Part shown: positions 1 to 22,008 of the stretch, in pieces | Position numbering within the stretch: the first letter of the stretch is position 1 | How the letters are laid out: every line of letters starts with the position of its first letter | Assembly (NCBI GenBank): GCA_965649825.1 | Contig: OZ287703.1 | Coordinates: 588,213 to 615,621 of the forward strand | Origin: Penicillus capitatus | Taxonomy: Eukaryota > Plantae > Chlorophyta | Direction: 5' to 3' | DNA: 27,409 bases | Position numbers and translations under genes: made by a program | Notes under the pieces: model-generated | What the model was told of the DNA's origin: nothing | Seen by the model: only the letters and a program-made list of their open reading frames with translations | Databases searched by the model: none

Positions 1-3000
1 ATGCGGCATGGAAGCCATCGTCGTCCATGTCCTCAGTCGTTCCGCCCAAGTTTTCTAAGACTTGACGATCCAGCTGTTCGATCAGAGCATCGACTCTTTC
101 AGAACTATCGGGAAAAACAGGGAACCGTGAGTCATTGTCTTGAATGTATGCCATTGATGCAAGGAATCCTTTGCGATAACCGCGAGAGCCATTCAGAAAT
201 CTGCGTCTCGATCTCAGTCCACTTCCCCGAGTTGGACGATTCAGCAAGCGATTCGGGAGAGTGCTCTGATTGAATCCGAAGAGAATGGCCACATCGTGTC
301 CGGAGAACTTCGGGCATGCGAAAGACAATTCGACATCGTTGGATGTCGAAAGGGTATTCAAATGACGATGCAGCTCTCCGCTGTGGCATCTGAGATCCTC
401 TAGAATGGGACGCACTGTGATCATCAAGAGATTTTCTGCACGACAGACATTGAAAATCGCATCCACAGCAGCTTTCACTTTGCCAGTCGTCCACCCAGAC
501 AACACACCTGCGTACTTGCCCAGCAAATAACGGCCACGCAATTGAATGAGCTCATCGAATGCAGCGTCTTGCACTTTGTCGCTATCTTTTCCATCCGTCT
601 GAAAGGCCATTCTCATGGAGAGGTCATCCGAAAAGATGTGAAGATTGGAGAGTCCTTTCAAAATCGCGCATCTCTCATCCACCTCTTTGCACGAACAAGC
701 TTCATACAATGCCACAAGAGCATTGTTCCACACGGAATTCTCTTTGCAGCTGGAGAGCATATCCAGCAGATAGCGAATCTCATCTTTCATGGTTGGCCGA
801 TATGAGATGATCGCATCCAATTGCTTCCACTGATAATTGAAAGACTCCAGATAAGCATGATCACATTCGGCATGCTGTACATCTGTAAGAGAAAGATCCA
901 TTGCATTGATGCAGTTCATCTTTTCAGATTCGAGATCATGGAGCTCTTTTGATGTGACAGTCACTTCGTTTTGTGTTTCTTCTGCCCTGAATTCGGATAG
1001 CTTTGTCCTGAGGTTGTTTAACTTGACCTGATATGTGGCCACTGAGATTTCGTTAAGCTCGTGGTGATTCATGCGATCGAGTGCCTGGACAGCCTTGATG
1101 GCTTCCTGCATAATTGCCGTCAGCGGTTGCGGTCGGTCTTTGGCATTCTTCCACAGATCTTTGAATTGCTGCTTCAACTCAGTAATCTGCTGCGCAACGA
1201 TATCTCTCTTGCGGCTCATATCTTGGTCCCGCGAATATGCCGAGCTTCCTTCGCCCGCACTAGGTTGGGATGTGCCCGGATCGTGGCCGGCTCCACTTCT
1301 TTGCAGATCTTCATATTTTGCCTTCAGTTTGCCAAAAAGGTTGTCCAGATCGTTCTTCTGGAGCCAGTCCTGTTCAATCGACAGTTTCTTAGTCAGAGCA
1401 TTCAGATCCTCCTGCCAGGTATCGAAATCCGTGACGGGTTTCGTGCTGTCAAACTTCATGTCTTCTCCTTCGATGATCAAGAGACCAGTGAAATAGGCAA
1501 CGGTTTTTGAGACAAGCACACAAATTTCGTTAACTGTCTCCCAGATTCTGGAACCTCTGGGTTTGAAGTATCTCGTCGAGTACCGTATCAGAAAATCTTT
1601 GAGCTTCAAGACTGGCAAAATGAAGTCCAGAGCAACGAAGATGTCTCCGAACTTATCCTCTGCCTGTTGCAGAAGACCCTTGAGACGCAATGTCAGCTCC
1701 TGGACTGGACAATCCTTCAGTTTGTCCACAAGTAGCTTAAAACTGAAAGCAAACGATGCAAATTCACGTTCCGATGACAGCAGTCTCTTCTCGATGTCTT
1801 TCAGTTTATCCTCGATGTTCTGCTCCATCATCTCGATCTCTGTCTGGTCAAAGGGCTTGGCTGCCGCTGCAAGCATCTTTCGAGATTTTCTGCTTAGGCG
1901 ATTTGATTCTGTCTCAGTTTCTCTTATGCTATTATCAACACGCAAGAGATGACGCGTGAGTGTATCTTCCGACTCTTCAAAGAGGAGACTGATTGCATCC
2001 TTGTACGCCACCATCTGATTCTTCAGGTCCGTGGTGAACTCGTCGACTCTCTTGTGATCAGATGCGGCAGAAGCATTGTTGAGGTGGGGAAGAGTGGTCA
2101 ACGTGTAGAGACAGGCTACCAGAGTGGATCCCAGTCTCGATAGGCGACCATCAAAAGAGCAATCTCTCGTTAACTGGCATTCTTTCAACGATATGGCATA
2201 GTCCATCTCACGAGATTTCTTCCACTGCTCAAGCCATCTCTGAGCTGATGAGCTGCCCGGATTCCACGTGTAGTTCATCACTTTGATCGACTTCTTCTTG
2301 CTGTTCTCAGTCGGTTTCTCATCTTCGATGATGACAAGAGAGACAAGATCCGAGAGGGAACTGCAAGAGCTGAGTTCACCGACCAAGAGTGCTGCCCTTG
2401 GACAGCCACCATCAGCCATATCCACATCGAGATTTTCATCACAGCACTTCACCAGTCTATAAGGTATGCTGCTCTTGATCGTTTGGTTAAACAGAACTGC
2501 CCAGACCATGCAGAGTTCGCTCTTGCAGATGCTTTCTTTGGACTCTTTGAGTCGCATGCGCAGTCGACATCGAGTGGTAACATCGATTTTGCTGAGCGCC
2601 GGATGATTAGATTGCACTTCTTTTAAAAGATACTCCAGAATGCTGCCATGGAGCTTGACGGCATCATCGAATTCGCTCTGCACAATGAATGCGCAATCCG
2701 ATGACCTCAACAGATCGTCAAACCTCTCCATTGGTGTCCGCGGCGCCATCTGACAGGAAGCTTCTTCCCCGTGAGGCACGGCAGTCGATGTCGATGGTCC
2801 ACCTTCTTCAGAGCTTTCCGTCCTTCTGCCTTTCGTGACTGCATCAAAGACTCCTTTTACCATACTGAAGCATTGAGCAATGGCGCCTTTGCCTTCAGAC
2901 GGTTCCTGTGGTTTTGGATTCAACAAATCATCCAACAAGGAGCGCATGTCTGACATGATTCTCAGACGACTAAACAATCTCTGAATCTCCAGTACTTCAT

Positions 3001-6000
3001 CTGCAGCGATGCTCTCTTGATGGAAGAGCATCAGCCTCTCGTCCAGAAGGAGAGATACCTTGAAGTCGAGTGCAGAAAAGACATACACCATGGCAATTCT
3101 GTTGGCTTCTTCCTTCGGCTTTCCTGTCTCTTTCAGCAGTCTCAGAATCGATCCCCTGAGCTTGTCCCTATCTATCTCTGCGAAGGTGTCAGCCAGTCTC
3201 TTGTGGAGATTGAATTTCAATGCCTTGTCTTGGCAATTTTGCTGATGTTCGCCCAAATCCTCTGCTTTCTTGGCAAAGTCGTCGCCTTCAAGGGGATGGA
3301 AGTAATGCACCAGATGTCGCACGGAAGAGAGTCTTTCTATGAGTTCTTGAATGTCTTCCAGATCTTGACTGCAACAACCGACATCGCTGTCCAGAACACA
3401 ACTCAGTGTCTTGAGGACGAGACTCAGATCCAGGACAAATGCTTTTCTCTGCTTCCAGTCGACAAACGAGGAGTTGTTGACAAATCGCTTGACCATTCTC
3501 TCCAACTTTTCCGGTGTTTGCTTGAAAAGTGCCAGTGTCTTGTTTTCTGTCGTACTGAATTCTTTCAGATAATCAGCTAAGGGGCCTCCCTTCTCGCTGC
3601 AGAACTGAGAGAATTCTGATGCACTGTGAACTGTTCTGGAGATCTGTTCTGCATGCGCCATCTCATGAGGGTACAGATGCGCAAAGAGCTTTTCAAGAAA
3701 CAGAGCCAATGCCTTAGAAAAGCTGCCCTTGTTCTCAATACTCATCACTTGCCTCAACAGGTGTTTTGCGCAAGTGTGAACGAATGGAGCGAAAACAGAT
3801 CGCAGCACTCTGCTCTCTTTCTGGAATGGTGTCAGGGTATCTCTCTTGCCGTCGATGACAGAATAGAATCTGTGCATCGGAAGCAATGTCCTTTCTTTGC
3901 AGGTTTCATGCATGGCTGTCCGCAACTCCTCCAGATCGTCGTCTGGCTCAACAATGGCAGTGTAGACTCTCCATAATCCCCATACAGTAGCACTGAACAG
4001 CGGCTCTCCTCTCTTCAGCCAGGTACGGGCGACAGACAGGGCCTGCTCAAGCATCCTGAAACTTATTTTGGAGTCTTGCATGATGGTGATTTGAGACGTC
4101 TGCGCCAGTTTCCGTGCCTTAACATGAAAAGCGACGGCGAGAATGGCGGCCACAATGCCGCCTTCGACGGATCCGAGCGCTTCAGAGGCAATCTCGACCG
4201 TTTCATGGCTCTCCAGTGAGCGTAAGTCTGGATCAAGGACATCTCCATCAATCTCGGGCAACCAGATCTTGATCATTCTGTTCAGCAGCGGGTTGGAGAG
4301 TCCGAAGGTGTTGATCTTCTTCCTGTCCGCCGTCGCAAAGATGCGGGTGGTAAGATGGATGCCGGCACCAGGCTTGAGCTCCTCGCCCTCCGAGTGCTCG
4401 TAGAGGCTGAGAAACGGAGTCTCTTCGAACAGGGACAGCAGTCGCTCGATCACGTCCGGCGATGCTGCATTGATGTTGTCGAAGAGGATGAACGACCCTG
4501 ACTTCAGCGCCTTGATAAGATCAGACTCCACAAACTTAAAAACAGTCGATGAAGAATCGAGCTCAATCGATGACAATGTGTTCTTAAGTGCAGCTGTCTT
4601 CTTCGCCAACGCTTCCTGCATCTCCGATCCACACTCTTCAAGGATTCCAAGCACCAACTCCACATTTTCAATGACTTCATGCATTTCGTCAATCGAGAGA
4701 TTTGATTTGTTTTTGGAATAAAGCATCTTCATGGCCTCATAGAAAGCAGCACGGTTGATCTGAAGAATCTCTCCCGAGTGCCCGAGTCCAAATCTCGCAA
4801 CATCATCTCTCAGCTCAGGTATAGTTTTCTTCAGTTCCTTGGTAATGTCGCTTGTGGTAAAGGGAAGCCACTGTCCGATGAGATCGGCGACTTCGAAATC
4901 CCGATGAAGTGACAAGACAAGCAGAGGGATGCCTGTGATGGCAGCCAGCTCCTTCACGAGGGATGTCTTCTTGGAGCAGGTGGGTCCTTCGAGCAGCACT
5001 GCCCTCTGGGACTGGCTGGCCGTTGCCAACAGCTCCAGCTGCCGGATCGTGTTTACTGTGTGCACCAACGATCCCTGAGACGCACGAGCTTCGTCCTTCT
5101 CCATGTAGACATTTCCAATTCGCAGAAGATTGCCCACAGACAAGTCGATGGATGGATGGTCTCCCTGATCCAATTCCATCTGAGGTGGCTCAACAACTTC
5201 GTCGATGACGTCTTGGATCTGCCCGGCGGCTAATCGATTGTCGAATCGATGTTTGAACACCAGCTGAAGAGCCTTGCGGATGACGCTTAGGATAACTGAG
5301 TTCTGATCAAATGCCTGCTCGGTCTCTTTGCTTCCATCGCATACCATCACTGTGTGATGCGATATCTGCGTCTCGATATTCCCGGTCACAATATCCCGGA
5401 CAGCCGCCAGGTCTCTCAGGTTAAACTTGTGCTTTCGATTGGCTCCCGGAATCTGTCCACTCTCCACTAACTGTTCGACCCTCTTGTAAACCTCAAAGAT
5501 GTGCTGCAGATGATCTTCAGTGATCAGCTTCTTCGAACTGAGTGTTTGAAACTGTTTTTCCAGAATCTGTGTAAGATCTGTGTCTGTATAGGATTCCATT
5601 TGAACAGCTGTAAAGATATTCTTAATGGATCTCGACAGCTTGGCTCTGCCGCCTCCCTGCGCTGCCGGATTCATTGTTGCAAAAATCCGTATACCTTTGA
5701 GGGAAAGGCGACCTGAATCCAGTTTGCCTGGAATGGAAAATCCTTCTGTAGCGGCAGATCCATCGAGCAATGGGACAAGAGATTCCAGCACTTGCGCAGG
5801 CAGCAGATTGATTTCGTCTAACAGGATCCATTTCTGAGATTTGAGAGCCTTTAGCAGCGTGCCATCTCTCCATTTGAATTCTCTTCGGTCGTCGACATAA
5901 AGTGGCATGACAGCGCCATAAAACTGCTCGATGGAGGTGTCGCCCGAGCAGTTGATGCGTTCCAGATCCGTTCCAAGAAACTGGGCAACCTGAGTAATGA

Positions 6001-9000
6001 CAGCAGTCTTGCCTATTCCGGGAGCTCCTTCGAGCAACAACGGCGAATTTGTGCAGACAGATGCAAAAACGCGAGCCATGTTCTCAACGACCGAATCCGT
6101 CGGACACAGAAACAGATCGGGCAACTCAGATTCTTCAGATGCCTCTGCTGCATTCGACATCATGCTCAAGGAGAGGCCGATGCCTTTCAATGAAACCACT
6201 CGGCCGCCCTGATCTTCACTCTCCTCCACAGTAAACGGATTGTCTTCCACAGGAAGTGCATGATCGGGTTTCAGATCCTCAAATGCGTTTGGAAAGAACT
6301 TCTGAAGCACCTCGTTCTGGATATCAGTTGGATAGCCTGCCAGATAGAAGAACTTAGCTCCCAGCATGCATCTCTTCTGGAGGCTGAGGTTCCTTGGATG
6401 CTGTGTTACAAACGTGATCCATCTCAGAATCCGTCTGAAGTCTTCACAGGGATGCTCGGGGTGAGCTCCGACGATTTCGGATCGGATGTCTTTTACCTGG
6501 CTCATGAGATATGGCAAAGAGTCCATTTCGCTGTAATGGAGCTCCTGTCGAAACTTCTCCTCTGCGATGGACATGATGTCAGACGTCTGATAGACAGGCA
6601 CTCGAATCTGCGTCAGTCTGCTCATTGTGGCAGCGCTGAGCTGCGGCTTCTTGTTCGCCGAGTCCAAATGGGAAGTGGCTATGAAGCAATAGCCTTGATT
6701 GGGGATGTTCATTTCGGCAGCGATGCTGTCTGAGAACGACACGTCTTCCGGAATGCTGAACGTCGGATCCACTTCCAGAGCACTGTTCAGTCTTTCAGTC
6801 ACTGCCTGAGCACAGAGATCGTAGTCTTCCACGACAAACGCATGCTCCATGGTAATGGCCTTGACGAACGGACCGTCCCTGAACATGAAGCAGGGTTTGC
6901 TGTTTTTCACATCTGTCGAACGAATGAACAGTCTCAGTTGCTTCAGCCGATGCACCATTCTCTGCATGGCAGCAGGTATGCTCTCGCCCATGATGTTATT
7001 CGCCAATTCTGGTATCTTTGCGACGACATCATCTATGAGTGTCAGGTGATCATCTTCTGTTAGCTTGGCACTGTTCTCTCTCGGTGAGTCTAGATCTTTG
7101 TTGTGATCATCAGGATCTGCAGATGTGGATGCTTGGATGCCATGTCCTTCCCTCTGTGCGTTCGAGTCTTCTGTATCTCCATCGTCATCCACATCAGTCT
7201 CGCCGTTGACACTGCCATCCGATGAGCGATCGAATTCGAATTCCGGGTATTCGTTTTCGTATTCGCCATCAGAGGCTGACTGCTCGTCTTCGGCATCGGT
7301 GCCAATCGGGTCTGACAGATCTTCGTACCCAGGATCGAATTCTTCTCCATGCAATTTGCATTTGAAGCGCAGCACTCTTCTGTACAAACTCTGGCGAAGC
7401 CGGCGAAGATACGTCCTTCCTCTCACTGTCTCTCCCGAACGTGGTTGAACTTCCAGCTCGTTGTCTAGATAAGAGAAAATGAAGTCCCCCGTAGATGCCA
7501 GACTGCTCAGCACGTCCACGAAGGACACCAGCTGCACTTGGCCAATCAGGTCCGTTGCCTCAGACTGCGACGTCAAGTGGACGCGCTGCACGCTCTTTGT
7601 CATCCCTGACAGCTCCAGCCACGTCTTGATGAGTTCTGTCTTGAATGCAGATTCTCCGTACAACAACACGGGTTCGTTGGCCTTCATGGCAAAGGCAAGA
7701 TCAATCAGCTTGTGCTGGAAGACAGCAGGAGGTCCATGTCGCGAACGGCTGCCTCTCCACAGAGGACTGTTGTCGAGTTTGAATCCAGGGAAGTGGACGT
7801 GAAGGTGTCCCCGGCAGAAACGCACCCCATTTTCCTCCTGCACGATGTTCTTCTTTGTCAATGCCTCTGCCTCAACCTCTTCACTGGCTCCAAAGCTCGA
7901 TTCAACGAGCCTCAGCAGTTTGGCTGTCTCTTCCTCTGTGATGGCTTGCGGAGCCAGCAATGACATGGTCACACTGGTCCAAGTCACTCTTTGCCTTTCG
8001 TCTTTCAGGAGTTTGTATCTTCTCACGATCTTGATGATATCTCGCATTGTTAGCTGAAATCCTTCAGCAGGAGATAGATGATATAACTTGGCCAGCCCAT
8101 CGACATTAAGCTGCCCATCAAAACCGGCATATCTTTCGCCATGAAATCGCTTGGCGAGGATTTCCATAAACTCATCTCGTGGGAAGTCTTCGATGTCAAC
8201 TGTCAAGAATCGATTCCGTACAGTGACCGGCAAGAGTTTTCGACCATCTCTCCCTCCTCGAGATGGATTCTGAGTGGCGAAGAAGCGGAAGTTTGGATGG
8301 ACACTCAATCGCATGTTGCTTCCAGGGATCTGCACAGTACAGTTTCCTTCCAAGAAAGGCATCAGCGCCGATGTCACAGCCACTGGAGCGAGATTGAATT
8401 CATCGGAGATGAACCAGTGACCGTTCTCCATTGCCTGCACAAGGATGCCTTTCTGAAAAACGAAGCCATCGTTTGCTGGCATCCAGCTTCCAAAGTAGTC
8501 CTGCACTGTTGTCGTGTCGCTGTTACTCAACAGCAGCACTCTGTTGGTTACACCAGCAAATCGACGCAGACCATAGACGAGTGCCGTCTTGCCGACAGCA
8601 GGTTTTCCTTCCAGCAGAACGGGCTTGTTCGTAAGGGCACCCAAAAGAAGTGCCTGTGCATGGCGCTTTCTGGAAGATGTCAGGACCAGATCGCCATCGA
8701 TCGTAAAATCATCAAGCAGTCCTAGTGTATCCAGCACGTTGCTCGGGCACTCCATCTTGCAACAGAGGGAATCCCTGGCAAGAGGGTCCCTTATCTGAGC
8801 AGCGAAGGTTGACATCATTGCGCAATGAAGGGCCCTCTGATCTCCAAGTCTTGGCATTTGGACCATCAGCATCGTCGCCATGTCGATCAACGTGACAAAA
8901 TCTCTGAAGGATGTCAGCATGTGCCGGTTCTCTGCAAAGAAATCTCTGATTTTGAAGCAGTAAGTGTAGATGATTGGGGCAGCCGCTGCAAGACGGTCCA

Positions 9001-12000
9001 GGGGCAAACAGCACCTTAACATGGACTTCAAAGCAGAGAAGAATTCTTCGACGGGCATTCTTGCGGGATCATCGATGTGGACGACAACGAAACGATTGAA
9101 CAGTGCAGCTGTGAGCTCACTGGATGCGCTATCCTGTCCTCTGCCTGCAATGCCTTTTGGAGTGAAGGTCGCCACAATCTGAAAGCCTCTTGCCGGTCCT
9201 GGCACATTAGATACTGTTCCGTCGGCAAGGATGCGAGAATGCAATGGTTTCCTGTCTCCTTTTTCTGTCAGGCACAGCACTTTGGGAGATTCCAGCACAG
9301 GGTTCATTCTCTCCTGCAGAACGGACTCGGCTTGGCCAATGTTGTCGACGATGCAGACACTGCCGTCTTTAAAGGCTCTGGTCAGTGGACCATCTCTCCA
9401 TTCGACTTTCCGTTGAGCGCCAATGATGTCTCCTGGCAGATACTCTCCAAGCATCATTGCCGGTTCACTCTCGCGCGTCAGCGTGACGTGCTCGTACTGA
9501 TTGCCCAAGAGGAAAGCCACTGCCTTTCCGATGCACGTCTTGCCGGATCCGGCATTTCCCGATATCAGAATGGACTGTTCGATGCGGATGGCTTCGGCAA
9601 TGACATCCAGGTTCTCGCACATGTGATTGTCGAGTGCAATCGGCATTTCTGGAACGGAACAAGCAGACCATGACACGATGCCGAGATCGCCGCCAAACGT
9701 GTTCATAAAGATGTCGAGAACCATGTCCCGTGCTTCCTTGAGTCTGAATCGCATGCAGTATCCTTCTGCGCCAATGCGTCCCAATGCTATGAGCATCTTC
9801 GTCTGCAGAACGTCTTCTTTCATGGCGTCTGCTAGCCACTTCGCCAGCCAAGATTCAGAGAACGAGGAATAGATGCCGAAGGTGTTCATGAATTCAGGAC
9901 TCTGAATCATCTTCAGAACGGCAATGTGCGCATCAGCACAAACATTGAAAGCTTTCATCACGTCTTCATTCGGAAACTGATGGAACGGGAAATGTCTTTG
10001 CCAGAATTGGCTGACAAGAAGGATGTCACTCGCGCGACATGGACTCTTGATCTTTGAATACTTCTCAAAGAGACGTTCCAGTGGAGTCTCGCCTGAGTGG
10101 ATGGTTAGGTTGTGCCGATTGATGACGTTCTGAACCAATTGGCGTCCCTCTCCGCGGAATCGACAGCCATAGATCAGCCATGCGTACTCCCCTAGCTTCT
10201 CTTCCGCATGAACAAGGCGTTCTTCTGCCAGGATCATGTCTGTCCACATGAGAAGCTCCCGATTGGTGATCGTGGCGTAGCTGCCCTTTTCGGCGCATCC
10301 TTTGAGCTCTTCTCTGAGATTAGAATGAAAACCTGTCATAAGTTGAGACAGTTTTTGAACCCGGTCGACATCGTCGTCCTCCTTGATGCCTTGGTGCATT
10401 TTCTTTGCCACGATCGTTCTCCATTCCTCTGTGGGCAGTTCTTTGAAATGCATCACAGAGAACTGCGACAGAAAGGCATCGCTGATCCGTTCTCTCTTGC
10501 CAGCTTGCCACGGGTTTTGAGATGCAAACAGTCGAAAGTTGGGATGTCTCGGAATGATCTCGGTAGGGGACACGGCAGAGCTTCGGTCAGTAATCGCTAT
10601 CTTTCCCGATTCTATGGCATCGATCACGACCTTCAGAGCGCCCTCTTCGGCCAGATTCATTTCGTCCAGCAGAACCCAGAAACCTTTCTTGAAGCTCTCG
10701 GCAAAGGGCTGAAGCTTCCGGATCGTTTCTCCTTCTCTGTTAATGACAACCTTTGCCAGAAAGTCTTCAGGAGTAAGATTAGAAGACATGTTGATTCGAA
10801 CGAATATCACTTCCTTGCGGCGACACACCTCTGTGAGCGTCGCTGTCTTCCCCACGCCGGTGGATCCGACCAGCAGCACGGGGCTACCATCCTCGGCCAC
10901 CTCTTCTATCTTGGCTATATTCTCTTCTGTAGTGGGGGTCAGTATCATGGGGCAGATCGGTTCGGTGTCTTTCTCCCTTGAATGTGGTACCGTATGTGTC
11001 TGGAGGACAGTTCTTCGCAGATGACTGCTCTTTAGTGTGAGATCGGAGTGCCCGAATGTTTTGACCATTCTCTGCAAATCTGCCAAGGGCGCATTCTCTG
11101 ACGTGATGTTTTGGCCTTGTGGAAACTTGGCGGAAAAGAAGGCAGGAACAGTCGTCATGTACTCGATCGACTGAGCTAGTTTATCTTCCTTCTGTGACTG
11201 AGACTTGCCATCGATCAGAAGAGAGACAAGCTCTTCGACTTTTGCAAGAACACTGCTTGCGTCATTTCTTTGCAGCAACCCGAAGAGCCTGTCAAGCATG
11301 GCAGTGAGTGACGTTTTCAGAGGATCATCTGTCGAGTCAGCAGGGACATCGATTACATACTGCACCAGCCAATCGAAGAGCTTGACGTCCTTCAAGGATT
11401 CCGTATCAGCTGCTGTGCTGTGTGCGATCGTGAGCCATTCACTGAGCTGATGAACTGCCTTGTCTGCCAAGACACGGACAAAAGATCTGAAATCTTCCGA
11501 CGGGATGTCGCACAGCAGCATCTGGTCCACGTTGGACATCAGTGCAGCGATTGGATACTGGCAATCTTTTAGATCAAGGGCACAGGCCAAACGGATTACA
11601 GCTAGTACAGCATCACTGGAAACGCCGGCGTCTCCAGGGGAAGGACACAGCAATGCCTTACACACTTTTGGCCAATCAACGGATCCTTTCGCGATGTTGC
11701 GAACTTCACAACGACCAGTGTCTGATTGCAGAAGAACGTCGAGGGACATCAGCAGCGGTGCACTATTGTTGCTCTTCATGTTCTCGCAGAGTTTAAAAAG
11801 ACGCGTCACATCATCCACATTAAGATTCCTGCACCACTTGTGCAACCATCTGGCTAGGCAATCTTCTTCAGAAAGCACAACAAACGCACGAGGGTTCACG
11901 TGAGACACGCACAGGAGACAGGAAAAAATAGAGAAGGATGCTTTTCTGTGACAGTAATTCGAAATTGTTTTGAAATCCGAAGACACACTGAAAGGAAAGT

Positions 12001-13324
12001 CTTCTGCATCGATCGATGCCATATTGTCTCGCAGGGTCAGATAGAAAGAAAACAGCGATTCGACAAAGGCCTTGTTAAGATCAGAGACCTGCACAAATTT
12101 TGTCTCTTCTGCAAAGAACAGGGATAGAAAGTGCAAACGCTCACAGATCCACTGTTCTGGCTTTTTATCTAGGATGTCAGAATTCAGAAGGCACTGACAG
12201 CAAATGTCTAGAAAGCAGGGATAGGCAGTGGACAGTGTGTTTTCAGCACAGAAGGTAACAAACTCACAGATTTTTTCAAACAGCACATCAGACAGAGCAA
12301 AATGCACAACAGGTGATAAAAACAGAAACTCGATTGTGTGAAAGAGAAGGATACTATTATCGGATGCCCCGACGAGCAATCCGTCAAGAAAAAGAGTGGC
12401 GATGTCCATTTCAATGCCATTCAATACCATCTCTAGAATTCCGTTGAGCTGAGCTTTTGTGGAAGAAACGTCAGGTCGGTAGAGATCGATGAGATTCGAA
12501 ACGAATGCATCGAATGCATTTCTAGATGTCCTTGCCGTTATGGCAGCCGTCAGAATTTTCTGAACGTGCTCACTAGTGTCACATCTCCCTTTCTGCGCGA
12601 CATCGAATCCACCACCATCCAAGGTCACTTCTGATGGTCCATCCATACGCGTGTCTTCTTGCTGAGAACTGTCACTGGAATCTGGAGTCATGCCAGCGGC
12701 GACAAAAGGATCGAAAACCAGCGATAGCAGTTCCTGAGAAGCAAGGATATCTCCCACAATCTGAGGGCCGTTCTTAATCTTTCCATGTATCTCCTTGCCG
12801 GTGCCCAATTCGCCACAAACGATGTGTTCCAAGAGGCCAAGGACGGCATCGATATCATTGCCCAAGACGTCTTTCAGAGTCAGCATTCCGAGCAGAATCT
12901 CAGCACTGGGGCCATCATCCTCACTCTGCAGCTTCATTCTCACTCTTTTCTTTATTGCCACCTCTTGTACTGACAACTTCGAATCGTCGTATTCTCTTTT
13001 GCGAAGGAGAATGTCGTAGACGCTGCATGCTTGCGATGTGGGCACTTTCTGCACGAACCAGTTCAGGATCTGTGCCAAAGGACCACAGGCGGCCGTCTTC
13101 GCTTTGAGCACTCTGACTGCATGCGCTTGGACGATGCAGTGGAAGAATGCGGCAGTGCCGTTCTTGGTCAGATCACTTTCCGTCGTTTCGATGGAACCGC
13201 GACGCGTGATCGCATCAACGGCTAGACGGATATCCTGAACTGCCGAGTCTTCTCTCTCGTCCAATGCGCGTTTTAGCGCGTCTTGGAGCATCGAAAGGTT
13301 AACCCACTTTGATGTCGCTTCCAT
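1..13324 (-). CDS. Giant midasin/Rea1-like protein with six tandem AAA+ (MoxR/dynein-related) modules; 3'-partial, >=4,441 aa, continues past the left edge
   Basis: The minus frame with codon starts at positions =1 mod 3 is open from 13507 (in-frame TAA at 13510-13508) to the window edge, and the first ATG is at 13324 (MEATSKWVNLSML...). No ORF in this frame is listed in the track, as expected for a frame with no stop. Walker A-type motifs: GSTGVGKT 10867, GNAGSGKT 9559, GKPAVGKT 8608, GESAFKT 7657, GAPGIGKT 6028, GPTCSKKT 4987. Each is followed by MoxR-clade signatures such as RINCSGDTSIEQFYG, FKWRDGTLLKAL, WILLDEIN, HPNFRLFASQNP and RIFATMNP. About 820 aa of helical N-terminal region precede the ring and >=1,300 aa of helical/coiled-coil linker follow it. 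No MIDAS/vWA domain lies inside the window. The start could extend by an upstream exon. Orthology to MDN1 is not established. Confidence 0.92.
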   Translation of the reverse strand, partial: MEATSKWVNLSMLQDALKRALDEREDSAVQDIRLAVDAITRRGSIETTESDLTKNGTAAFFHCIVQAHAVRVLKAKTAACGPLAQILNWFVQKVPTSQACSVYDILLRKREYDDSKLSVQEVAIKKRVRMKLQSEDDGPSAEILLGMLTLKDVLGNDIDAVLGLLEHIVCGELGTGKEIHGKIKNGPQIVGDILASQELLSLVFDPFVAAGMTPDSSDSSQQEDTRMDGPSEVTLDGGGFDVAQKGRCDTSEHVQKILTAAITARTSRNAFDAFVSNLIDLYRPDVSSTKAQLNGILEMVLNGIEMDIATLFLDGLLVGASDNSILLFHTIEFLFLSPVVHFALSDVLFEKICEFVTFCAENTLSTAYPCFLDICCQCLLNSDILDKKPEQWICERLHFLSLFFAEETKFVQVSDLNKAFVESLFSFYLTLRDNMASIDAEDFPFSVSSDFKTISNYCHRKASFSIFSCLLCVSHVNPRAFVVLSEEDCLARWLHKWCRNLNVDDVTRLFKLCENMKSNNSAPLLMSLDVLLQSDTGRCEVRNIAKGSVDWPKVCKALLCPSPGDAGVSSDAVLAVIRLACALDLKDCQYPIAALMSNVDQMLLCDIPSEDFRSFVRVLADKAVHQLSEWLTIAHSTAADTESLKDVKLFDWLVQYVIDVPADSTDDPLKTSLTAMLDRLFGLLQRNDASSVLAKVEELVSLLIDGKSQSQKEDKLAQSIEYMTTVPAFFSAKFPQGQNITSENAPLADLQRMVKTFGHSDLTLKSSHLRRTVLQTHTVPHSREKDTEPICPMILTPTTEENIAKIEEVAEDGSPVLLVGSTGVGKTATLTEVCRRKEVIFVRINMSSNLTPEDFLAKVVINREGETIRKLQPFAESFKKGFWVLLDEMNLAEEGALKVVIDAIESGKIAITDRSSAVSPTEIIPRHPNFRLFASQNPWQAGKRERISDAFLSQFSVMHFKELPTEEWRTIVAKKMHQGIKEDDDVDRVQKLSQLMTGFHSNLREELKGCAEKGSYATITNRELLMWTDMILAEERLVHAEEKLGEYAWLIYGCRFRGEGRQLVQNVINRHNLTIHSGETPLERLFEKYSKIKSPCRASDILLVSQFWQRHFPFHQFPNEDVMKAFNVCADAHIAVLKMIQSPEFMNTFGIYSSFSESWLAKWLADAMKEDVLQTKMLIALGRIGAEGYCMRFRLKEARDMVLDIFMNTFGGDLGIVSWSACSVPEMPIALDNHMCENLDVIAEAIRIEQSILISGNAGSGKTCIGKAVAFLLGNQYEHVTLTRESEPAMMLGEYLPGDIIGAQRKVEWRDGPLTRAFKDGSVCIVDNIGQAESVLQERMNPVLESPKVLCLTEKGDRKPLHSRILADGTVSNVPGPARGFQIVATFTPKGIAGRGQDSASSELTAALFNRFVVVHIDDPARMPVEEFFSALKSMLRCCLPLDRLAAAAPIIYTYCFKIRDFFAENRHMLTSFRDFVTLIDMATMLMVQMPRLGDQRALHCAMMSTFAAQIRDPLARDSLCCKMECPSNVLDTLGLLDDFTIDGDLVLTSSRKRHAQALLLGALTNKPVLLEGKPAVGKTALVYGLRRFAGVTNRVLLLSNSDTTTVQDYFGSWMPANDGFVFQKGILVQAMENGHWFISDEFNLAPVAVTSALMPFLEGNCTVQIPGSNMRLSVHPNFRFFATQNPSRGGRDGRKLLPVTVRNRFLTVDIEDFPRDEFMEILAKRFHGERYAGFDGQLNVDGLAKLYHLSPAEGFQLTMRDIIKIVRRYKLLKDERQRVTWTSVTMSLLAPQAITEEETAKLLRLVESSFGASEEVEAEALTKKNIVQEENGVRFCRGHLHVHFPGFKLDNSPLWRGSRSRHGPPAVFQHKLIDLAFAMKANEPVLLYGESAFKTELIKTWLELSGMTKSVQRVHLTSQSEATDLIGQVQLVSFVDVLSSLASTGDFIFSYLDNELEVQPRSGETVRGRTYLRRLRQSLYRRVLRFKCKLHGEEFDPGYEDLSDPIGTDAEDEQSASDGEYENEYPEFEFDRSSDGSVNGETDVDDDGDTEDSNAQREGHGIQASTSADPDDHNKDLDSPRENSAKLTEDDHLTLIDDVVAKIPELANNIMGESIPAAMQRMVHRLKQLRLFIRSTDVKNSKPCFMFRDGPFVKAITMEHAFVVEDYDLCAQAVTERLNSALEVDPTFSIPEDVSFSDSIAAEMNIPNQGYCFIATSHLDSANKKPQLSAATMSRLTQIRVPVYQTSDIMSIAEEKFRQELHYSEMDSLPYLMSQVKDIRSEIVGAHPEHPCEDFRRILRWITFVTQHPRNLSLQKRCMLGAKFFYLAGYPTDIQNEVLQKFFPNAFEDLKPDHALPVEDNPFTVEESEDQGGRVVSLKGIGLSLSMMSNAAEASEESELPDLFLCPTDSVVENMARVFASVCTNSPLLLEGAPGIGKTAVITQVAQFLGTDLERINCSGDTSIEQFYGAVMPLYVDDRREFKWRDGTLLKALKSQKWILLDEINLLPAQVLESLVPLLDGSAATEGFSIPGKLDSGRLSLKGIRIFATMNPAAQGGGRAKLSRSIKNIFTAVQMESYTDTDLTQILEKQFQTLSSKKLITEDHLQHIFEVYKRVEQLVESGQIPGANRKHKFNLRDLAAVRDIVTGNIETQISHHTVMVCDGSKETEQAFDQNSVILSVIRKALQLVFKHRFDNRLAAGQIQDVIDEVVEPPQMELDQGDHPSIDLSVGNLLRIGNVYMEKDEARASQGSLVHTVNTIRQLELLATASQSQRAVLLEGPTCSKKTSLVKELAAITGIPLLVLSLHRDFEVADLIGQWLPFTTSDITKELKKTIPELRDDVARFGLGHSGEILQINRAAFYEAMKMLYSKNKSNLSIDEMHEVIENVELVLGILEECGSEMQEALAKKTAALKNTLSSIELDSSSTVFKFVESDLIKALKSGSFILFDNINAASPDVIERLLSLFEETPFLSLYEHSEGEELKPGAGIHLTTRIFATADRKKINTFGLSNPLLNRMIKIWLPEIDGDVLDPDLRSLESHETVEIASEALGSVEGGIVAAILAVAFHVKARKLAQTSQITIMQDSKISFRMLEQALSVARTWLKRGEPLFSATVWGLWRVYTAIVEPDDDLEELRTAMHETCKERTLLPMHRFYSVIDGKRDTLTPFQKESRVLRSVFAPFVHTCAKHLLRQVMSIENKGSFSKALALFLEKLFAHLYPHEMAHAEQISRTVHSASEFSQFCSEKGGPLADYLKEFSTTENKTLALFKQTPEKLERMVKRFVNNSSFVDWKQRKAFVLDLSLVLKTLSCVLDSDVGCCSQDLEDIQELIERLSSVRHLVHYFHPLEGDDFAKKAEDLGEHQQNCQDKALKFNLHKRLADTFAEIDRDKLRGSILRLLKETGKPKEEANRIAMVYVFSALDFKVSLLLDERLMLFHQESIAADEVLEIQRLFSRLRIMSDMRSLLDDLLNPKPQEPSEGKGAIAQCFSMVKGVFDAVTKGRRTESSEEGGPSTSTAVPHGEEASCQMAPRTPMERFDDLLRSSDCAFIVQSEFDDAVKLHGSILEYLLKEVQSNHPALSKIDVTTRCRLRMRLKESKESICKSELCMVWAVLFNQTIKSSIPYRLVKCCDENLDVDMADGGCPRAALLVGELSSCSSLSDLVSLVIIEDEKPTENSKKKSIKVMNYTWNPGSSSAQRWLEQWKKSREMDYAISLKECQLTRDCSFDGRLSRLGSTLVACLYTLTTLPHLNNASAASDHKRVDEFTTDLKNQMVAYKDAISLLFEESEDTLTRHLLRVDNSIRETETESNRLSRKSRKMLAAAAKPFDQTEIEMMEQNIEDKLKDIEKRLLSSEREFASFAFSFKLLVDKLKDCPVQELTLRLKGLLQQAEDKFGDIFVALDFILPVLKLKDFLIRYSTRYFKPRGSRIWETVNEICVLVSKTVAYFTGLLIIEGEDMKFDSTKPVTDFDTWQEDLNALTKKLSIEQDWLQKNDLDNLFGKLKAKYEDLQRSGAGHDPGTSQPSAGEGSSAYSRDQDMSRKRDIVAQQITELKQQFKDLWKNAKDRPQPLTAIMQEAIKAVQALDRMNHHELNEISVATYQVKLNNLRTKLSEFRAEETQNEVTVTSKELHDLESEKMNCINAMDLSLTDVQHAECDHAYLESFNYQWKQLDAIISYRPTMKDEIRYLLDMLSSCKENSVWNNALVALYEACSCKEVDERCAILKGLSNLHIFSDDLSMRMAFQTDGKDSDKVQDAAFDELIQLRGRYLLGKYAGVLSGWTTGKVKAAVDAIFNVCRAENLLMITVRPILEDLRCHSGELHRHLNTLSTSNDVELSFACPKFSGHDVAILFGFNQSTLPNRLLNRPTRGSGLRSRRRFLNGSRGYRKGFLASMAYIQDNDSRFPVFPDSSERVDALIEQLDRQVLENLGGTTEDMDDDGFHAA

Positions 13325-14296
13325 CGTTGCCTGGAGACACAGCGACGCATTGGGCAGTCCGTCGCCGAACGAGGATTCTTCGTAGGATTGAGATTTTTGG
13401 ATGCCGCTCTCGTCGTTGACGAAAAAGGCGAAGGCGCGAAATGTTGCAAGACATCCGAACGACCGCGTGCGCTTGAACGAGACTGTAAGGATCGTTGTTT
13501 TGTGTTCTTACTTTGCAGGAGGTATTTTTCTTGAAGTCGCGAGAGGATCGTTGCTTCCGAACGAATGAATAGTCAACGACCCTTGGAAGAAGATATTCCG
13601 TGCTGGGCACGATGCGTCGCGTCAGGATTTAACGTTGAAAATGACGCGACATGGTGGATGTATCAAAGTAAACGAGATGCTTCGACGGTCGACGCCACTT
13701 CTTGCGGAACACTACGGTCTTCTATCTCCTCTATCTCGCCTTACCTTTTGTTATGTTCATGTCCAGCATGCATTCGGTCTACTCCTTCCTCCTGGAGTAA
13801 TCTCCCATGAGGCGAACATAAGTGAACACGTGAAGATTTCTGTATCGCTCTGATTTCAGAGACAGAAGTTCATCTCCTTTCACAAAAAGACTAGCCGTTA
13901 TGAAGAGACAAGTTCAACGGAACTCTTTTTTCATGCGCATTGCTGGTAAGGTAGATGGTGTGTATATTAAGGCGTCCATAGTTGGTTGGACCTGCAAGGT
14001 GCATACATTCAGTAAGAAGTCTGAAGACTGCGTGGCAATCGCTCTTAATCTTCTATAAGATGGAGGCTCTTTACTTGCACTGTTATGAAATGCACATAGT
14101 ATGTGTGCTATCAAATAGGGTCGGGACGTCCAGATACGGTGGGTGTCTCTTCATGACCACGTATGTACTCACTGAATTCAACATGCGCATGAAATGCAAT
14201 GCATGACGATAATGCCCCATTTTGGCCGCCCTACTGTTCACAGACGTTTCTTCCTCTGTTCTTTCTGGACGTGTTGTTGTGGTTGTCGACACAAGT
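13325..14296. promoter_or_regulatory. Divergent (head-to-head) intergenic region between the giant AAA gene and NOG1; presumed bidirectional promoter/5' UTRs
   Basis: Inferred from gene orientation only. No convincing coding frame and no specific motif was identified. It could hide 5' exons of the giant gene (GTAAG donor-like sites on the minus strand at 13511 and 13744). Confidence 0.4.
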
Positions 14297-18540: not shown

Positions 18541-18756
18541 AGTGAATCTGTGGAGTTTCTGTATCCGCGTTTTATCATGGCAGCCTTTGGATCAGACAGT
18601 GAGACATGCGTCATGCCATCGATAAAACGAGGCGGTAAGAAAGTGGATGGCATCGTCGCGTAATTTGACAGATTTTTTCATGGGACCCTTTTGAAAACGA
18701 CGCGTCATTCTTTATGTATCCACGTGGATGATGGACACTGTGTAAGAACATGAGGA

Positions 18757-21700: not shown

Positions 21701-21930
21701 GTTTCATCGCAATTGACCAGAAATCCGTGAAAGCAATCGATTCCTTCACTCTCAGTCGTGATCCCGCCTTTGAGTCGACCTCGGCTCAGTTGCCGCCCCT
21801 CGTCGTCGCACAGCACTGCTTGGCGATTGGGCATTACTTTGAGAAACCCATCGTGGTATGTCTTGTGCTTTTTTGTAAGGTGACGCGAGTAAAGAACGCG
21901 AAAACACTGAAGGACGTCGCTGCGCGTCAT
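18757..21930 (-). CDS. ZGRF1: ZGRF1-like protein: N-terminal DUF2439 plus Upf1/DNA2-NAM7-like SF1B helicase, 911 aa, 10 exons
   Basis: DUF2439 signature FRVLYSRHLTKKHKTYHDGFL. Helicase motifs: LNDDQ, IHGPFGTGKS, CAHTNKAVD, LDEACQ, GDPCQLP, LRTQYRCHPDI, ATVDSFQGMEKDVIILS, RLNVALTRAR. Introns (minus): 21443-21494, 20857-20901, 20469-20512, 20189-20241, 19638-19694, 19444-19487, 19218-19262, 19085-19127 and 18958-19012 (GC-AG). The spliced length of 2,736 nt is a multiple of 3. The track's 21933 start is a TTG; the ATG is at 21930. Confidence 0.9.
18958..19012 (-). other. Non-canonical GC-AG intron (55 nt) in the ZGRF1-like gene
   Basis: CAG|GCAAGA...TTTTATGCAG|GGT. Only this splice rebuilds the conserved helicase motif VDSFQ|GMEKDVIILS. 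Confidence 0.88.
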
Positions 21931-22008
21931 CAAGGGCGAACGTTGTCAGGCGCCGTGTGAAACTGTCGATGATGTGACAGCCTTTAACAAGACCGACAGA
22001 CATCATGA

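What the first reader, a model, noticed from the sequence alone, without database searches (positions are those of the whole stretch)
1..13324. Hidden >=4,441-aa six-AAA giant protein, absent from the ORF track
Seen: a single minus-strand frame with no stop over 13.3 kb, carrying six tandem MoxR-type AAA+ modules. Established: only a few eukaryotic families have this architecture (midasin/Rea1, dynein heavy chain, RNF213/mysterin). Inference: the module motifs are closest to midasin, but the ~820-aa N-terminal region is far longer than the ~300 aa of canonical midasin and the catalytic pattern differs. It may be a divergent midasin-like paralog with a non-ribosomal role, for example a remodelling or defence machine.
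Basis: partly seen in the sequence, partly recalled or inferred. Interest (0 to 1): 0.85.

Follow-up and report, generated by a model that had tools for sequence, protein, structure and literature searches.

The report
Giant second midasin-like AAA+ protein
The window holds the front half of a real gene of about 8,300-8,600 codons for a giant six-ring ATPase that is a distinct, uncharacterised sister family of the ribosome-assembly motor midasin, found patchily in algae, protists and bdelloid rotifers alongside the ordinary midasin.

Summary
The minus strand from 13324 to 2 is one intron-free reading frame of 4,441 codons that runs off the window. It carries six AAA_5 (MoxR/dynein-class) modules and is under purifying selection (dN/dS 0.23 against an 81%-identical syntenic ortholog).

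It is only the N-terminal half. Complete relatives are about 8,200-8,600 aa and end in an acidic stretch plus four tandem VWA/MIDAS domains. The second of these matches the Rea1 MIDAS domain specifically (E 2.8e-10).

It is not the organism's MDN1. Both assemblies that hold close relatives also hold a canonical, intron-rich midasin gene at matching coverage and codon usage.

The family has about 40 representatives at 50% identity. Named members come from Bryopsis, Ectocarpus, Hondaea, Epipyxis, Prymnesium and bdelloid rotifers. It separates from MDN1 with 100% bootstrap and has its own invariant signature:
- Walker B is intact in AAA1, AAA3 and AAA5 only.
- AAA4 has lost its P-loop and carries a 200-400 aa insert.
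- The AAA2 regulatory helical bundle is absent.
- The N-terminal arm is an 800-aa HEAT-like solenoid.
- At least three paralogs appear to sit in one genome.

The most likely mechanism is a Rea1-like, ATP-driven puller that uses MIDAS heads. This is inferred. The substrate and the cellular role are unknown.

The parts
2..13324 (-). N-terminal 4,441 codons of the giant midasin-like gene. It has no intron in the window, and its C-terminal part of about 3,800-4,200 codons lies beyond the left end.
   Evidence: Stop-free frame. Conserved start. Six AAA_5 modules. dN/dS 0.23. Full length taken from L001, L002 and L006.
10955..13324 (-). N-terminal arm, residues 1-790: an all-helical HEAT/ARM-like solenoid.
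   Evidence: AF2 model with mean pLDDT 63 (about 75 over residues 250-705), all helices. Foldseek finds only generic alpha-solenoids, with TM<0.3. No similarity to the MDN1 N-terminal domain. Conserved only within the green-algal clade.
9647..10924 (-). AAA1 (residues 801-1226): Walker A GSTGVGKT, Walker B LLDE. Predicted to hydrolyse ATP.
   Evidence: the same motifs occur in about 40 family representatives.
8696..9646 (-). AAA2 (residues 1227-1543): Walker A GNAGSGKT, Walker B IVDN. Predicted to bind but not hydrolyse ATP. It lacks the H2 helical-bundle insert of MDN1.
7745..8695 (-). AAA3 (residues 1544-1860): Walker A GKPAVGKT, Walker B ISDE. Predicted active. Colinear with MDN1 AAA3.
6116..7744 (-). 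AAA4 (residues 1861-2403): P-loop lost (GESAFKT), Walker B replaced by VVED, and a large insert between the two halves. Colinear with MDN1 AAA4.
6995..7402 (-). Acidic low-complexity stretch inside the AAA4 insert (residues about 1975-2110; 35% D+E).
   Evidence: It is the least constrained part (dN/dS 0.40).
5075..6115 (-). AAA5 (residues 2404-2750): Walker A GAPGIGKT, Walker B LLDE. Predicted active. It has a midasin-type lid (AAA_lid_7) and is colinear with MDN1 AAA5.
   Evidence: L001 and L006 carry a 47-nt intron inside this Walker A codon run; the window does not.
3935..5074 (-). AAA6 (residues 2751-3130): Walker A variant GPTCSKKT, Walker B LFDN. Predicted not to hydrolyse ATP. It has an H2 insert.
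2..3934 (-). Start of the post-ring region (residues 3131-4441). It is predicted to be mostly helical and has no recognisable domain.
   Evidence: No Pfam hit. AF2 model at pLDDT 40, unusable. No similarity to the MDN1 linker. Conserved in Bryopsis (E 2e-30).
13325..14296 (.). Head-to-head intergenic region of about 970 bp between the giant gene and NOG1. It is presumably a shared promoter region.
   Evidence: ORF layout. The same arrangement is seen in L001.

Best explanation
The window encodes the N-terminal half of a protein of roughly 8,300-8,600 residues (about 0.9 MDa). It belongs to an uncharacterised eukaryotic family that is a sister (paralog) of midasin/Rea1, not the organism's MDN1.

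Shown here:
- The chain is built of an 800-aa helical-repeat arm and then a ring of six concatenated AAA_5 modules. Odd modules (1, 3, 5) keep Walker A and Walker B. Even modules are degenerate: AAA2 and AAA6 have DN, and AAA4 has no P-loop and a large acidic insert.
- After the ring comes a very long, fast-evolving middle region.
- In complete relatives the chain ends in an acidic stretch and four tandem VWA domains with MIDAS motifs. The second VWA is the counterpart of the Rea1 MIDAS domain.

Inferred, by analogy with Rea1 and with bacterial MoxR-VWA pairs:
- The MIDAS heads at the end of the long tail clamp acidic residues of one or more ligand proteins through a bound metal ion.
- The tail folds back so that a head docks on the ring.
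- ATP turnover at AAA1, AAA3 and AAA5 remodels the post-ring linker and pulls the ligand out of, or reshapes, a large complex held by the ring and the N-terminal arm.

With no AAA2 auto-inhibitory bundle and a different set of active sites, its regulation must differ from that of Rea1. The substrate is not the pre-60S particle's known ligands by any evidence here, and it is unknown.

I put the identity claim (a distinct midasin paralog family) at about 0.9 and the puller mechanism at about 0.45.
For: Gene reality.

Midasin relationship:
- The only strong matches among solved structures are Rea1/Mdn1.
- The midasin lid domain AAA_lid_7 is present.
- Profile-profile matrices keep the odd/even alternation. 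They give clear one-to-one matches for AAA3, AAA4 and AAA5.
- A profile of VWA2 plus its N-terminal extension hits the MIDAS domains of S. cerevisiae, S. pombe and C. thermophilum (E 2.8e-10 to 2.4e-7). Generic VWA domains score 1e-6 or worse.

Paralogy:
- A canonical MDN1 (45-49% identical to plant and fungal MDN1, only 26-28% to the window) lies in the same two assemblies. Coverage there is 185x against 139-173x, and 47x against 38x.
- Its codon usage correlates with that of the giant genes (r about 0.7, against 0.0-0.2 for control organisms), and it has the same tiny introns.
- MDN1 and the family split with 100% bootstrap.

Family signature: it is invariant in 5 close paralogs and about 40 representatives.

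Architecture of the missing half. The four-VWA tail is conserved in a Rotaria protein.

Expression: members are present in transcriptome-derived sets (TSA GEMP01, Epipyxis).

Mechanistic template: the Rea1 ring, linker and MIDAS docking (PMC6286127).
Against: - No experiment exists on any family member.
- The post-ring region shows no detectable similarity to the Rea1 linker, and its AF2 model is unusable. A Rea1-like lever is therefore assumed, not shown.
- The window's own C-terminus is not in the window. Its VWA tail is inferred from the 81%-identical ortholog's Pfam marks and from paralog B (L002).
- The claim that MDN1 and the paralogs share one genome rests on coverage, GC, codon usage and intron style in metagenome assemblies, not on a closed genome.
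- One ortholog pair differs by an in-frame loss of about 3,390 middle residues, so much of the length may not be mechanically essential.
- The module tree is neighbour-joining on 360 columns only.
Confidence: 0.65

Rival explanations
1. It works as a MoxR-VWA-type assembly chaperone. A fused AAA_5 ring and its VWA partner domains would insert a metal or cofactor into a target enzyme complex, or activate it, as RavA-ViaA, NorQ-NorD and CbbQ-CbbO do. It would not pull factors off a particle.
For: NorQ, CbbQ and a MoxR protein are the next-best solved matches after midasin. AAA_5, AAA_3 and bpMoxR are among the Pfam hits. The VWA domains carry intact MIDAS motifs. Literature on NorQD and MoxR-VWA cooperation turned up.
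Against: The ring is a single six-module chain whose AAA3-5 are colinear with midasin. The MIDAS-like VWA2 matches Rea1 MIDAS better than any bacterial VWA. An 0.9-MDa chain with a spacer of more than 4,000 aa is unlike any known MoxR chaperone.
Confidence: 0.15
2. It is a component of an immune or conflict system. In this reading it is a giant NTPase scaffold that senses or neutralises invaders, as proposed for RNF213 in animals and for MoxR-VWA ternary systems in bacteria. The mechanics could still be those of an AAA+ puller.
For: At least three diverged paralogs (52-57% identical) appear to sit in one genome. The distribution across eukaryotes is patchy. The N-arm and middle evolve fast, and one ortholog pair differs by a large in-frame deletion. 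Neighbours in other loci include a VWA plus C-type lectin gene (L003) and Death, Roc-COR and ankyrin genes (L004). A truncating LTR insertion persists in wild Rotaria (PMC7943196).
Against: There is no defence domain in the protein and no conserved gene neighbourhood. Here the window's neighbours are housekeeping-type genes (NOG1, a helicase, an F-box LRR). dN/dS of 0.23 shows no positive selection at this resolution. PADLOC was not searched.
Confidence: 0.15
3. It is simply this organism's own MDN1, evolving fast, and still works in 60S ribosome maturation.
For: Midasin is the best match. The gene sits head-to-head with the pre-60S factor NOG1 here and in L001. UniRef auto-names two family members 'Midasin'.
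Against: A canonical MDN1 coexists in both related assemblies. Rotifers, Ectocarpus and Bryopsis carry family members, and MDN1 is expected in all eukaryotes (established knowledge). The MDN1/family split has 100% bootstrap. The active-site pattern is different, there is no AAA2 bundle, there are four VWA domains and the chain is 8.5 kaa long.
Confidence: 0.02
4. It is a decaying or non-functional open frame: a relic, an assembly chimera or a selfish element.
For: No introns in 13.3 kb of a genome that otherwise has many. No annotation exists anywhere.
Against: 4,502 stop-free codons. dN/dS is 0.17-0.31 in every region. The catalytic motifs are invariant across paralogs and phyla. Synteny with L001 is conserved. 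No repeats or transposon marks lie inside it.
Confidence: 0.02

Closest known systems
Midasin / Rea1 / MDN1 (eukaryotic pre-60S remodelling AAA+ ATPase)
   Same: One chain carries six AAA_5 modules that alternate between an 'odd' and an 'even' type. AAA3, AAA4 and AAA5 match one-to-one. The midasin-type lid is present. AAA6 has Walker B DN in both. The tail carries an acidic stretch followed by a MIDAS domain with the midasin-specific N-terminal extension.
   Different: The protein is about 8,500 aa, against about 5,000. It has an 800-aa HEAT-like arm in place of the MDN1 N-terminal domain, which precedes AAA1 at residue 120-390 in the canonical sequences. It has no AAA2 helical-bundle regulator. 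The active sites are AAA1/3/5 instead of AAA2-5. AAA4 has lost its P-loop and gained a 200-400 aa insert. The linker is not detectably similar and is much longer. It has four VWA domains instead of one. It occurs in several copies per genome and coexists with a true MDN1.
Bacterial MoxR-class AAA+ ATPases with VWA partners (RavA-ViaA, NorQ-NorD, CbbQ-CbbO)
   Same: The ATPase class is the same (AAA_5/AAA_3), and it works with VWA/MIDAS domains that bind the target through a metal ion. This is the likely ancestral logic.
   Different: Those are homohexamers of a single-module protein of about 300 aa with the VWA on a separate protein. Here six diverged modules and four VWA domains are fused in one chain, in a eukaryote.
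Dynein heavy chain and RNF213 (other single-chain six-AAA+ giants)
   Same: They share the general design: six unequal AAA+ modules in one polypeptide, only some of them catalytic, plus long helical appendages.
   Different: There is no sequence match at E<=1e-3 to any dynein or RNF213 chain. There is no stalk, microtubule-binding domain or E3 module. A VWA tail is absent from both.
The 7,479-residue Rotaria magnacalcarata protein 'of unknown function with partial similarity to midasin' (Nowell et al. 2021, PMC7943196)
   Same: It probably belongs to the same family: that paper describes about 1,000 residues at about 25% identity to midasins, and proteins from other Rotaria assemblies carry the same ring signature and the same four VWA domains.
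   Different: It was mentioned only in passing, as the target of a transposon insertion. It was not analysed, named or recognised as a family.
Mg-chelatase BchI/BchD (from general knowledge, not tested here)
   Same: Active and inactive AAA+ units are combined. The inactive unit is followed by an acidic linker and a C-terminal MIDAS/VWA domain.
   Different: It consists of separate small subunits of a different AAA+ clade. This is a conceptual parallel only.

Membership tests
Midasin (MDN1/Rea1) orthologous group | Six AAA_5-type modules in one polypeptide | tested here: met
   Pfam AAA_5 with six stretches, E 1.3e-85; module map.
Midasin (MDN1/Rea1) orthologous group | AAA2-AAA5 catalytically competent; AAA1 and AAA6 lack Walker B | tested here: not met
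   In the window, AAA1/3/5 have DE, AAA2/6 have DN, and AAA4 has no P-loop. The canonical pattern was confirmed in 8 MDN1 sequences and in PMC6286127.
Midasin (MDN1/Rea1) orthologous group | Alpha-helical bundle insert in AAA2 (the ATPase regulator) | tested here: not met
   Canonical AAA2 is split by a 35-100 aa insert. In the window and in about 40 family members AAA2 is contiguous.
Midasin (MDN1/Rea1) orthologous group | Linker of about 1,700 aa after AAA6, homologous to the Rea1 linker | tested here: inconclusive
   hhalign probability below 1% with both shallow and deeper profiles, and no hmmsearch hit. The AF2 model is too poor for a fold comparison. Structural similarity cannot be excluded.
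Midasin (MDN1/Rea1) orthologous group | D/E-rich region followed by a single C-terminal MIDAS domain | tested here: inconclusive
   This part is not in the window. In paralog B (L002) there is an acidic stretch at about 6,800-7,100 and then four VWA domains. VWA2 matches Rea1 MIDAS at E 2.8e-10. A MIDAS domain is therefore present, but it is not single.
Midasin (MDN1/Rea1) orthologous group | It is the genome's midasin and groups with MDN1 sequences | tested here: not met
   A separate canonical MDN1 lies in both related assemblies. The MDN1/family bipartition has 100% bootstrap.
MoxR-class (AAA_5) AAA+ ATPases, broad sense | AAA_5/AAA_3 profile match with Walker A/B and MoxR-like solved relatives | tested here: met
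   (NorQ, CbbQ, 2r44).
New midasin-like giant family (defined here) | Signature AAA1 DE / AAA2 DN / AAA3 DE / AAA4 without P-loop and with a large insert / AAA5 DE / AAA6 DN, colinear over AAA1-3 in one stretch | tested here: met
   Window motifs. About 40 representatives carry the same pattern and match the profile over its full length.
New midasin-like giant family (defined here) | C-terminal tetrad of VWA domains (DNSGS, DISxS, DCTxS, DESGS) | not testable with these tools
   The window ends before this region. The tetrad is present in L002 and in Rotaria P0307. The window's ortholog L001 carries VWA/VWA_2 marks in its 5,708-aa second ORF.
Dynein heavy chain / RNF213 | Sequence similarity of the motor to dynein or RNF213; stalk with microtubule-binding domain, or an E3 module | tested here: not met
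   No dynein or RNF213 chain matches at E<=1e-3. There are only weak partial AAA_6/AAA_7 P-loop hits.

The most novel reading that the evidence does not exclude
This is an ancient second midasin-type motor, possibly dating to early eukaryotes, that was lost many times. It would be an ATP-driven puller of about 0.9 MDa with three alternating active sites and four integrin-like MIDAS heads. It would act on a non-ribosomal substrate still to be found, for example a large cytoskeletal, membrane or immune assembly. In the window's green-algal lineage it has expanded into several paralogs.
Probability: 0.3. Interest if true: 0.8.

Novelty: new variant of a known kind. Interest (0 to 1): 0.62.

Why it matters
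Single-chain six-AAA+ giants are very few (dynein, midasin, RNF213), and each has opened a field. This family has the midasin ring and the MIDAS head. It differs in its active sites, lacks the AAA2 regulator, has four ligand heads and is nearly twice as long.

It therefore gives a natural comparison for asking which features of Rea1 are needed for force generation and which are specific to the ribosome.

It is also a widespread and completely unstudied protein of about 0.9 MDa. It occurs in organisms that can be manipulated: Ectocarpus, thraustochytrids such as Hondaea, and bdelloid rotifers. In databases it is currently mislabelled as 'midasin', 'dynein heavy chain' or 'MoxR-like ATPase'.

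Tried and rejected
- Profile-profile comparison of the N-terminal 800 aa and of the post-ring region with the MDN1 N-terminal domain and linker: no signal, with either shallow or deeper alignments.
- AF2 of the post-ring 1,200 aa from a 3-row alignment: pLDDT 40, so I did not run a fold search on it.
- Foldseek of the N-arm model: only generic HEAT/ARM solenoids with TM<0.3. There was no dynein-linker or Rea1 N-terminal domain match.
- First module tree by hmmalign plus neighbour-joining: too noisy for the split modules. I replaced it with hhalign matrices and a tree on the contiguous AAA1 and AAA3 cores.
- Naming the organism:
  - The nearest named NOG1 hits are green algae and plants at only about 63%.
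  - The nearest named MDN1 hits are land plants at 48-49%.
  - The giant gene's nearest named relative is Bryopsis.
  - A green-lineage affinity is likely, but the species is not identified.
- Showing co-occurrence with MDN1 in a named species: a search with Ochromonas MDN1 failed once and then returned mostly unnamed fragments. It did, however, yield the two MDN1 loci in the relevant assemblies.
- Giant-virus origin: a scan of IMG/VR found only two short single-module matches.
- Literature: nothing on this family beyond one passing mention in rotifers.
- No tRNA genes and no tandem repeats in the window.
Full report
**1. The observation**

The minus strand carries one frame without a stop codon from 13507 to 2, a run of 4,502 codons. 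It is the only stop-free stretch of 400 codons or more in any frame of the window. At about 50% GC the chance expectation is about (61/64)^4502, roughly 1e-94 (my arithmetic).

The first ATG is at 13324, which gives 4,441 codons. This Met and the residues after it are invariant in the five closest homologs. The ORF tool does not list frames that run off the source, which explains why the gene is absent from the ORF track. One search shows only short plus-strand ORFs there.

Pfam finds six AAA_5 stretches (E 1.3e-85) and the midasin lid AAA_lid_7. Against an 81%-identical, syntenic ortholog (L001), dN/dS is 0.23 overall. It is 0.17 in the ring, 0.31 in the N-terminal region, 0.29 after the ring and 0.40 in an acidic insert. 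The gene is real, coding and constrained along its whole length.

**2. The window holds only about half of the gene**

The closest relatives came from ENA long-read metagenome assemblies.

- L001 is the syntenic ortholog, with the same neighbours: NOG1, a helicase and an LRR/F-box gene. Its reading frame is interrupted once, by a 47-nt GT-AG intron inside the AAA5 Walker A motif. It then continues for another 5,708 codons beyond the stored locus. The total is at least about 8,200 aa.
- L006 has the same intron and a second ORF of 5,869 codons.
- L002 holds a whole gene. After removing two tiny introns (41 and 48 nt) the product reads 8,153 aa, followed by about 380 more residues across further short introns. 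The total is about 8,530 aa, or about 0.9 MDa.

The C-terminal part of L002 has weak Ig-like (HYDIN/Cep192-type) matches and an acidic stretch at about 6,800-7,100. It ends in four VWA domains with MIDAS motifs: DNSGS at 7521, DISAS at 7897, DCTGS at 8136 and DESGS in the last exon.

**3. Anatomy of the part in the window**

- **Residues 1-790.** An AF2 model from a five-row alignment is all-helical, with mean pLDDT 63 and about 75 over residues 250-705. Foldseek matches only generic HEAT/ARM solenoids such as karyopherins and SF3B1, with TM below 0.3. This is a solenoid arm, not a recognisable MDN1 N-terminal domain or dynein linker.
- **Residues about 800-3130.** Six AAA modules.
- **Walker motifs.** They are identical in all five close paralogs:

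| Module | Walker A | Walker B |
|---|---|---|
| AAA1 | GSTGVGKT | DE |
| AAA2 | GNAGSGKT | DN |
| AAA3 | GKPAVGKT | DE |
| AAA4 | GESAFKT (P-loop shortened) | VVED |
| AAA5 | GAPGIGKT | DE |
| AAA6 | GPTCSKKT | DN |

- **AAA4 insert.** AAA4 is split by an insert that includes a 35% D+E stretch.
- **Residues 3131-4441.** No Pfam domain. The AF2 model has pLDDT 40 and was not used.

**4. Relation to midasin**

Among solved structures, only Rea1/Mdn1 match strongly (E 7e-97 to 2e-94). NorQ, CbbQ and a MoxR protein follow at 1e-8 or worse. No dynein or RNF213 chain passes 1e-3.

Profile-profile matrices of single modules show three things.
- The window clade and its distant relatives P0005 and P0006 match strictly on the diagonal, AAA1 to AAA6.
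- Against canonical midasin, with 22-row and 20-row profiles, AAA3, AAA4 and AAA5 find their own counterparts (scores 396, 266 and 434).
- AAA1 prefers the odd modules K5 and K3. AAA2 prefers K4. AAA6 prefers K2.

The odd/even alternation and the central colinearity point to a common six-module ancestor.

The homology extends to the tail. A two-row profile of VWA2 with its N-terminal extension (L002 plus a Rotaria protein) hits the MIDAS domain of S. cerevisiae Rea1 at E 2.8e-10. It hits S. pombe Mdn1 at 4.8e-9 and the C. thermophilum MIDAS crystal chain at 2.4e-7. Other VWA proteins score 1e-6 or worse (a weaker single-sequence hit).

By contrast, the N-terminal arm and the first 1,500 residues after the ring show no similarity to the MDN1 N-terminal domain or linker, with either shallow or deeper profiles.

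**5. It is not the organism's MDN1**

- **Active sites.** Canonical midasins in my alignments have Walker B in AAA2-5 and DN in AAA6. [quoted passage not shown]
- **AAA2 regulator.** Canonical AAA2 carries the insert that forms the regulatory helical bundle (PMC6286127 abstract). The window family has none.
- **A separate MDN1 exists.** A search with a canonical midasin fragment found P0434 and P0401. They lie on long contigs of the same two assemblies that hold the window's relatives. One is ERZ26696514 ctg303768 at 185x, where the giants sit at 173x, 162x and 139x. The other is ERZ25074695 ctg340356 at 47x, where the giant sits at 38x.
- **That gene is canonical.** P0434 is 45-49% identical and colinear with fungal and plant MDN1 over AAA3-5, and only 26-28% identical to the window protein. 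The gene is cut by many tiny introns.
- **It fits the same genome.** Its codon usage correlates with that of the giant genes (r 0.71-0.72). Two unrelated organisms used as controls give 0.02-0.24.
- **Tree.** A neighbour-joining tree of the AAA1 and AAA3 cores (360 columns, 200 bootstraps) separates six MDN1 sequences from all 35 family members with 100% support. The MDN1 set covers fungi, a shark, Ginkgo, an oomycete and a red alga.

**6. The family**

An exhaustive HMMER search of 1.84 billion representatives with an AAA1-3 profile returned about 45 proteins that match the profile over its full length. Several are single ORFs of 7,500-7,950 aa. They rank above the canonical midasins, which match only piecewise. 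About 40 of them show the same six-site signature.

Named members:
- Bryopsis sp. KO-2023 (GMH34713.1)
- Ectocarpus sp.
- Hondaea fermentalgiana (GBG29381.1, labelled 'dynein heavy chain' and 'Midasin')
- Epipyxis sp.
- a Prymnesium MAG
- the bdelloid rotifers Adineta, Rotaria and Didymodactylos
- a transcriptome contig (GEMP01)

A Rotaria protein has the same four VWA domains in the same order. [quoted passage not shown]

The N-arm and post-ring regions of the window are recognisably conserved only in the green-algal clade, namely P0158, P0169 and Bryopsis.

**7. Paralogs and organism**

The close relatives fall into three types that are 52-57% identical to each other:
- type A: the window and L001, 81% identical;
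- type B: L002 and L003, 74% identical;
- type C: L006.

One assembly (ERZ26696514) holds A, B and C on three contigs at 139-173x. That organism probably has at least three copies.

In the tree the A/B/C clade has 100% support. It is sister to P0158, and then to Bryopsis plus P0169, also at 100%. The nearest named NOG1 and MDN1 hits are green algae and land plants, at only about 63% and about 49%. A green-lineage alga is likely. The species is unknown.

The B copy in L003 lacks about 3,390 middle residues in frame relative to its ortholog in L002. Its VWA1 MIDAS motif has changed from D to N.

**8. How it most likely works**

Shown: the ring with three intact and three degenerate sites, the long tail, the acidic stretch, and four MIDAS-bearing VWA domains, one of which is the counterpart of Rea1 MIDAS.

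Inferred from Rea1 (ring, linker and MIDAS docking; PMC6286127) and from MoxR-VWA pairs:
- The MIDAS heads bind carboxylate residues of ligand proteins through a metal ion.
- A head docks on the ring.
- ATP turnover at AAA1, AAA3 and AAA5 moves the post-ring element and pulls on the ligand, while the ring and the HEAT-like arm hold the substrate complex.

The loss of the AAA2 bundle and the shifted active sites imply a different control of docking. The substrate and the cellular process are unknown. I give the family assignment about 0.9 and the puller mechanism about 0.45.

Rival readings are a MoxR-like metal or cofactor chaperone, and an immune or conflict role. The second is suggested by the paralog expansion, the patchy distribution, the fast-evolving arms, and the lectin, Death and Roc-COR neighbours at other loci. 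The fast-evolving-MDN1 and pseudogene readings are effectively excluded.

**9. Verdict**

I rate it a new variant of a known kind, with interest of about 0.6. It is a surprise to AAA+ specialists and can be tested in tractable organisms. No functional evidence exists yet.

Noticed in passing
window 13325-16474 (+ strand gene from about 14297): A NOG1 (nucleolar GTP-binding protein 1, a pre-60S factor) gene lies head-to-head with the giant gene, about 970 bp away. It is split into at least three frames (14222-14770, 14755-15861, 15995-16474), which implies small introns. The same head-to-head pair is present in L001. It is curious next to a midasin relative, but paralogs B and C have other neighbours.
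   Followed up: partly
window 2-13324; L001 17277-17323; L008 7000-22700: Intron density is strikingly uneven. The giant gene has no intron in 13.3 kb. Its ortholog in L001 and paralog C in L006 have a single 47-nt intron that splits the AAA5 Walker A motif. The canonical MDN1 of the related genome is chopped into many short exons by introns of about 45-50 nt. This suggests intron gain or loss between close relatives, or an unusual history of the giant genes.
   Followed up: partly
window 18611-21933 (- strand): A helicase gene with a ZGRF1-like N-terminal domain (21466-21933) and Upf1-type AAA_11/AAA_12 helicase core pieces (18760-20742). It is spread over several frames, so it is also interrupted by small introns.
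   Followed up: partly
window 22009-23750 (- strand): Two overlapping-frame ORFs (300 and 306 aa) that look like leucine-rich repeats in the window's translation. The syntenic L001 genes carry F-box-like and LRR_FBXL15 marks. This is probably one F-box/LRR gene with an intron or frame change.
   Followed up: no
window 25987-26565 (- strand): An ORF of 192 aa with a GST_N_3/glutaredoxin-like thioredoxin-fold domain in its C-terminal half.
   Followed up: no
L003 10001-25647 versus L002 10001-35840: The B-type paralog in L003 has an in-frame loss of about 3,390 residues (L002 positions about 4,044-7,429) compared with its 74-79% identical ortholog. This gives a version of about 5,200 aa that keeps the arm, the ring, about 1,000 post-ring residues and the VWA tail. 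Its first VWA has MIDAS D changed to N (CILVNNSGSM).
   Followed up: partly
L004 (ERZ18545485 ptg000068l) and L003 3487-5256: P0006 and P0156, two family members that are sisters in the tree (100% bootstrap), are both recorded on a contig of 841,558 bp, probably the same one. Next to P0006 are Death-domain, Roc-COR and ankyrin genes. Upstream of the L003 paralog is a gene with VWA plus a C-type lectin domain.
   Followed up: no
protein records GBG29381.1 (Hondaea), UniRef A0A2R5GM63, A0A814FQM5, JGI 'MoxR-like ATPase': Public names for family members are inconsistent and misleading: 'Dynein heavy chain, cytoplasmic', 'Midasin', 'MoxR-like ATPase'.
   Followed up: no
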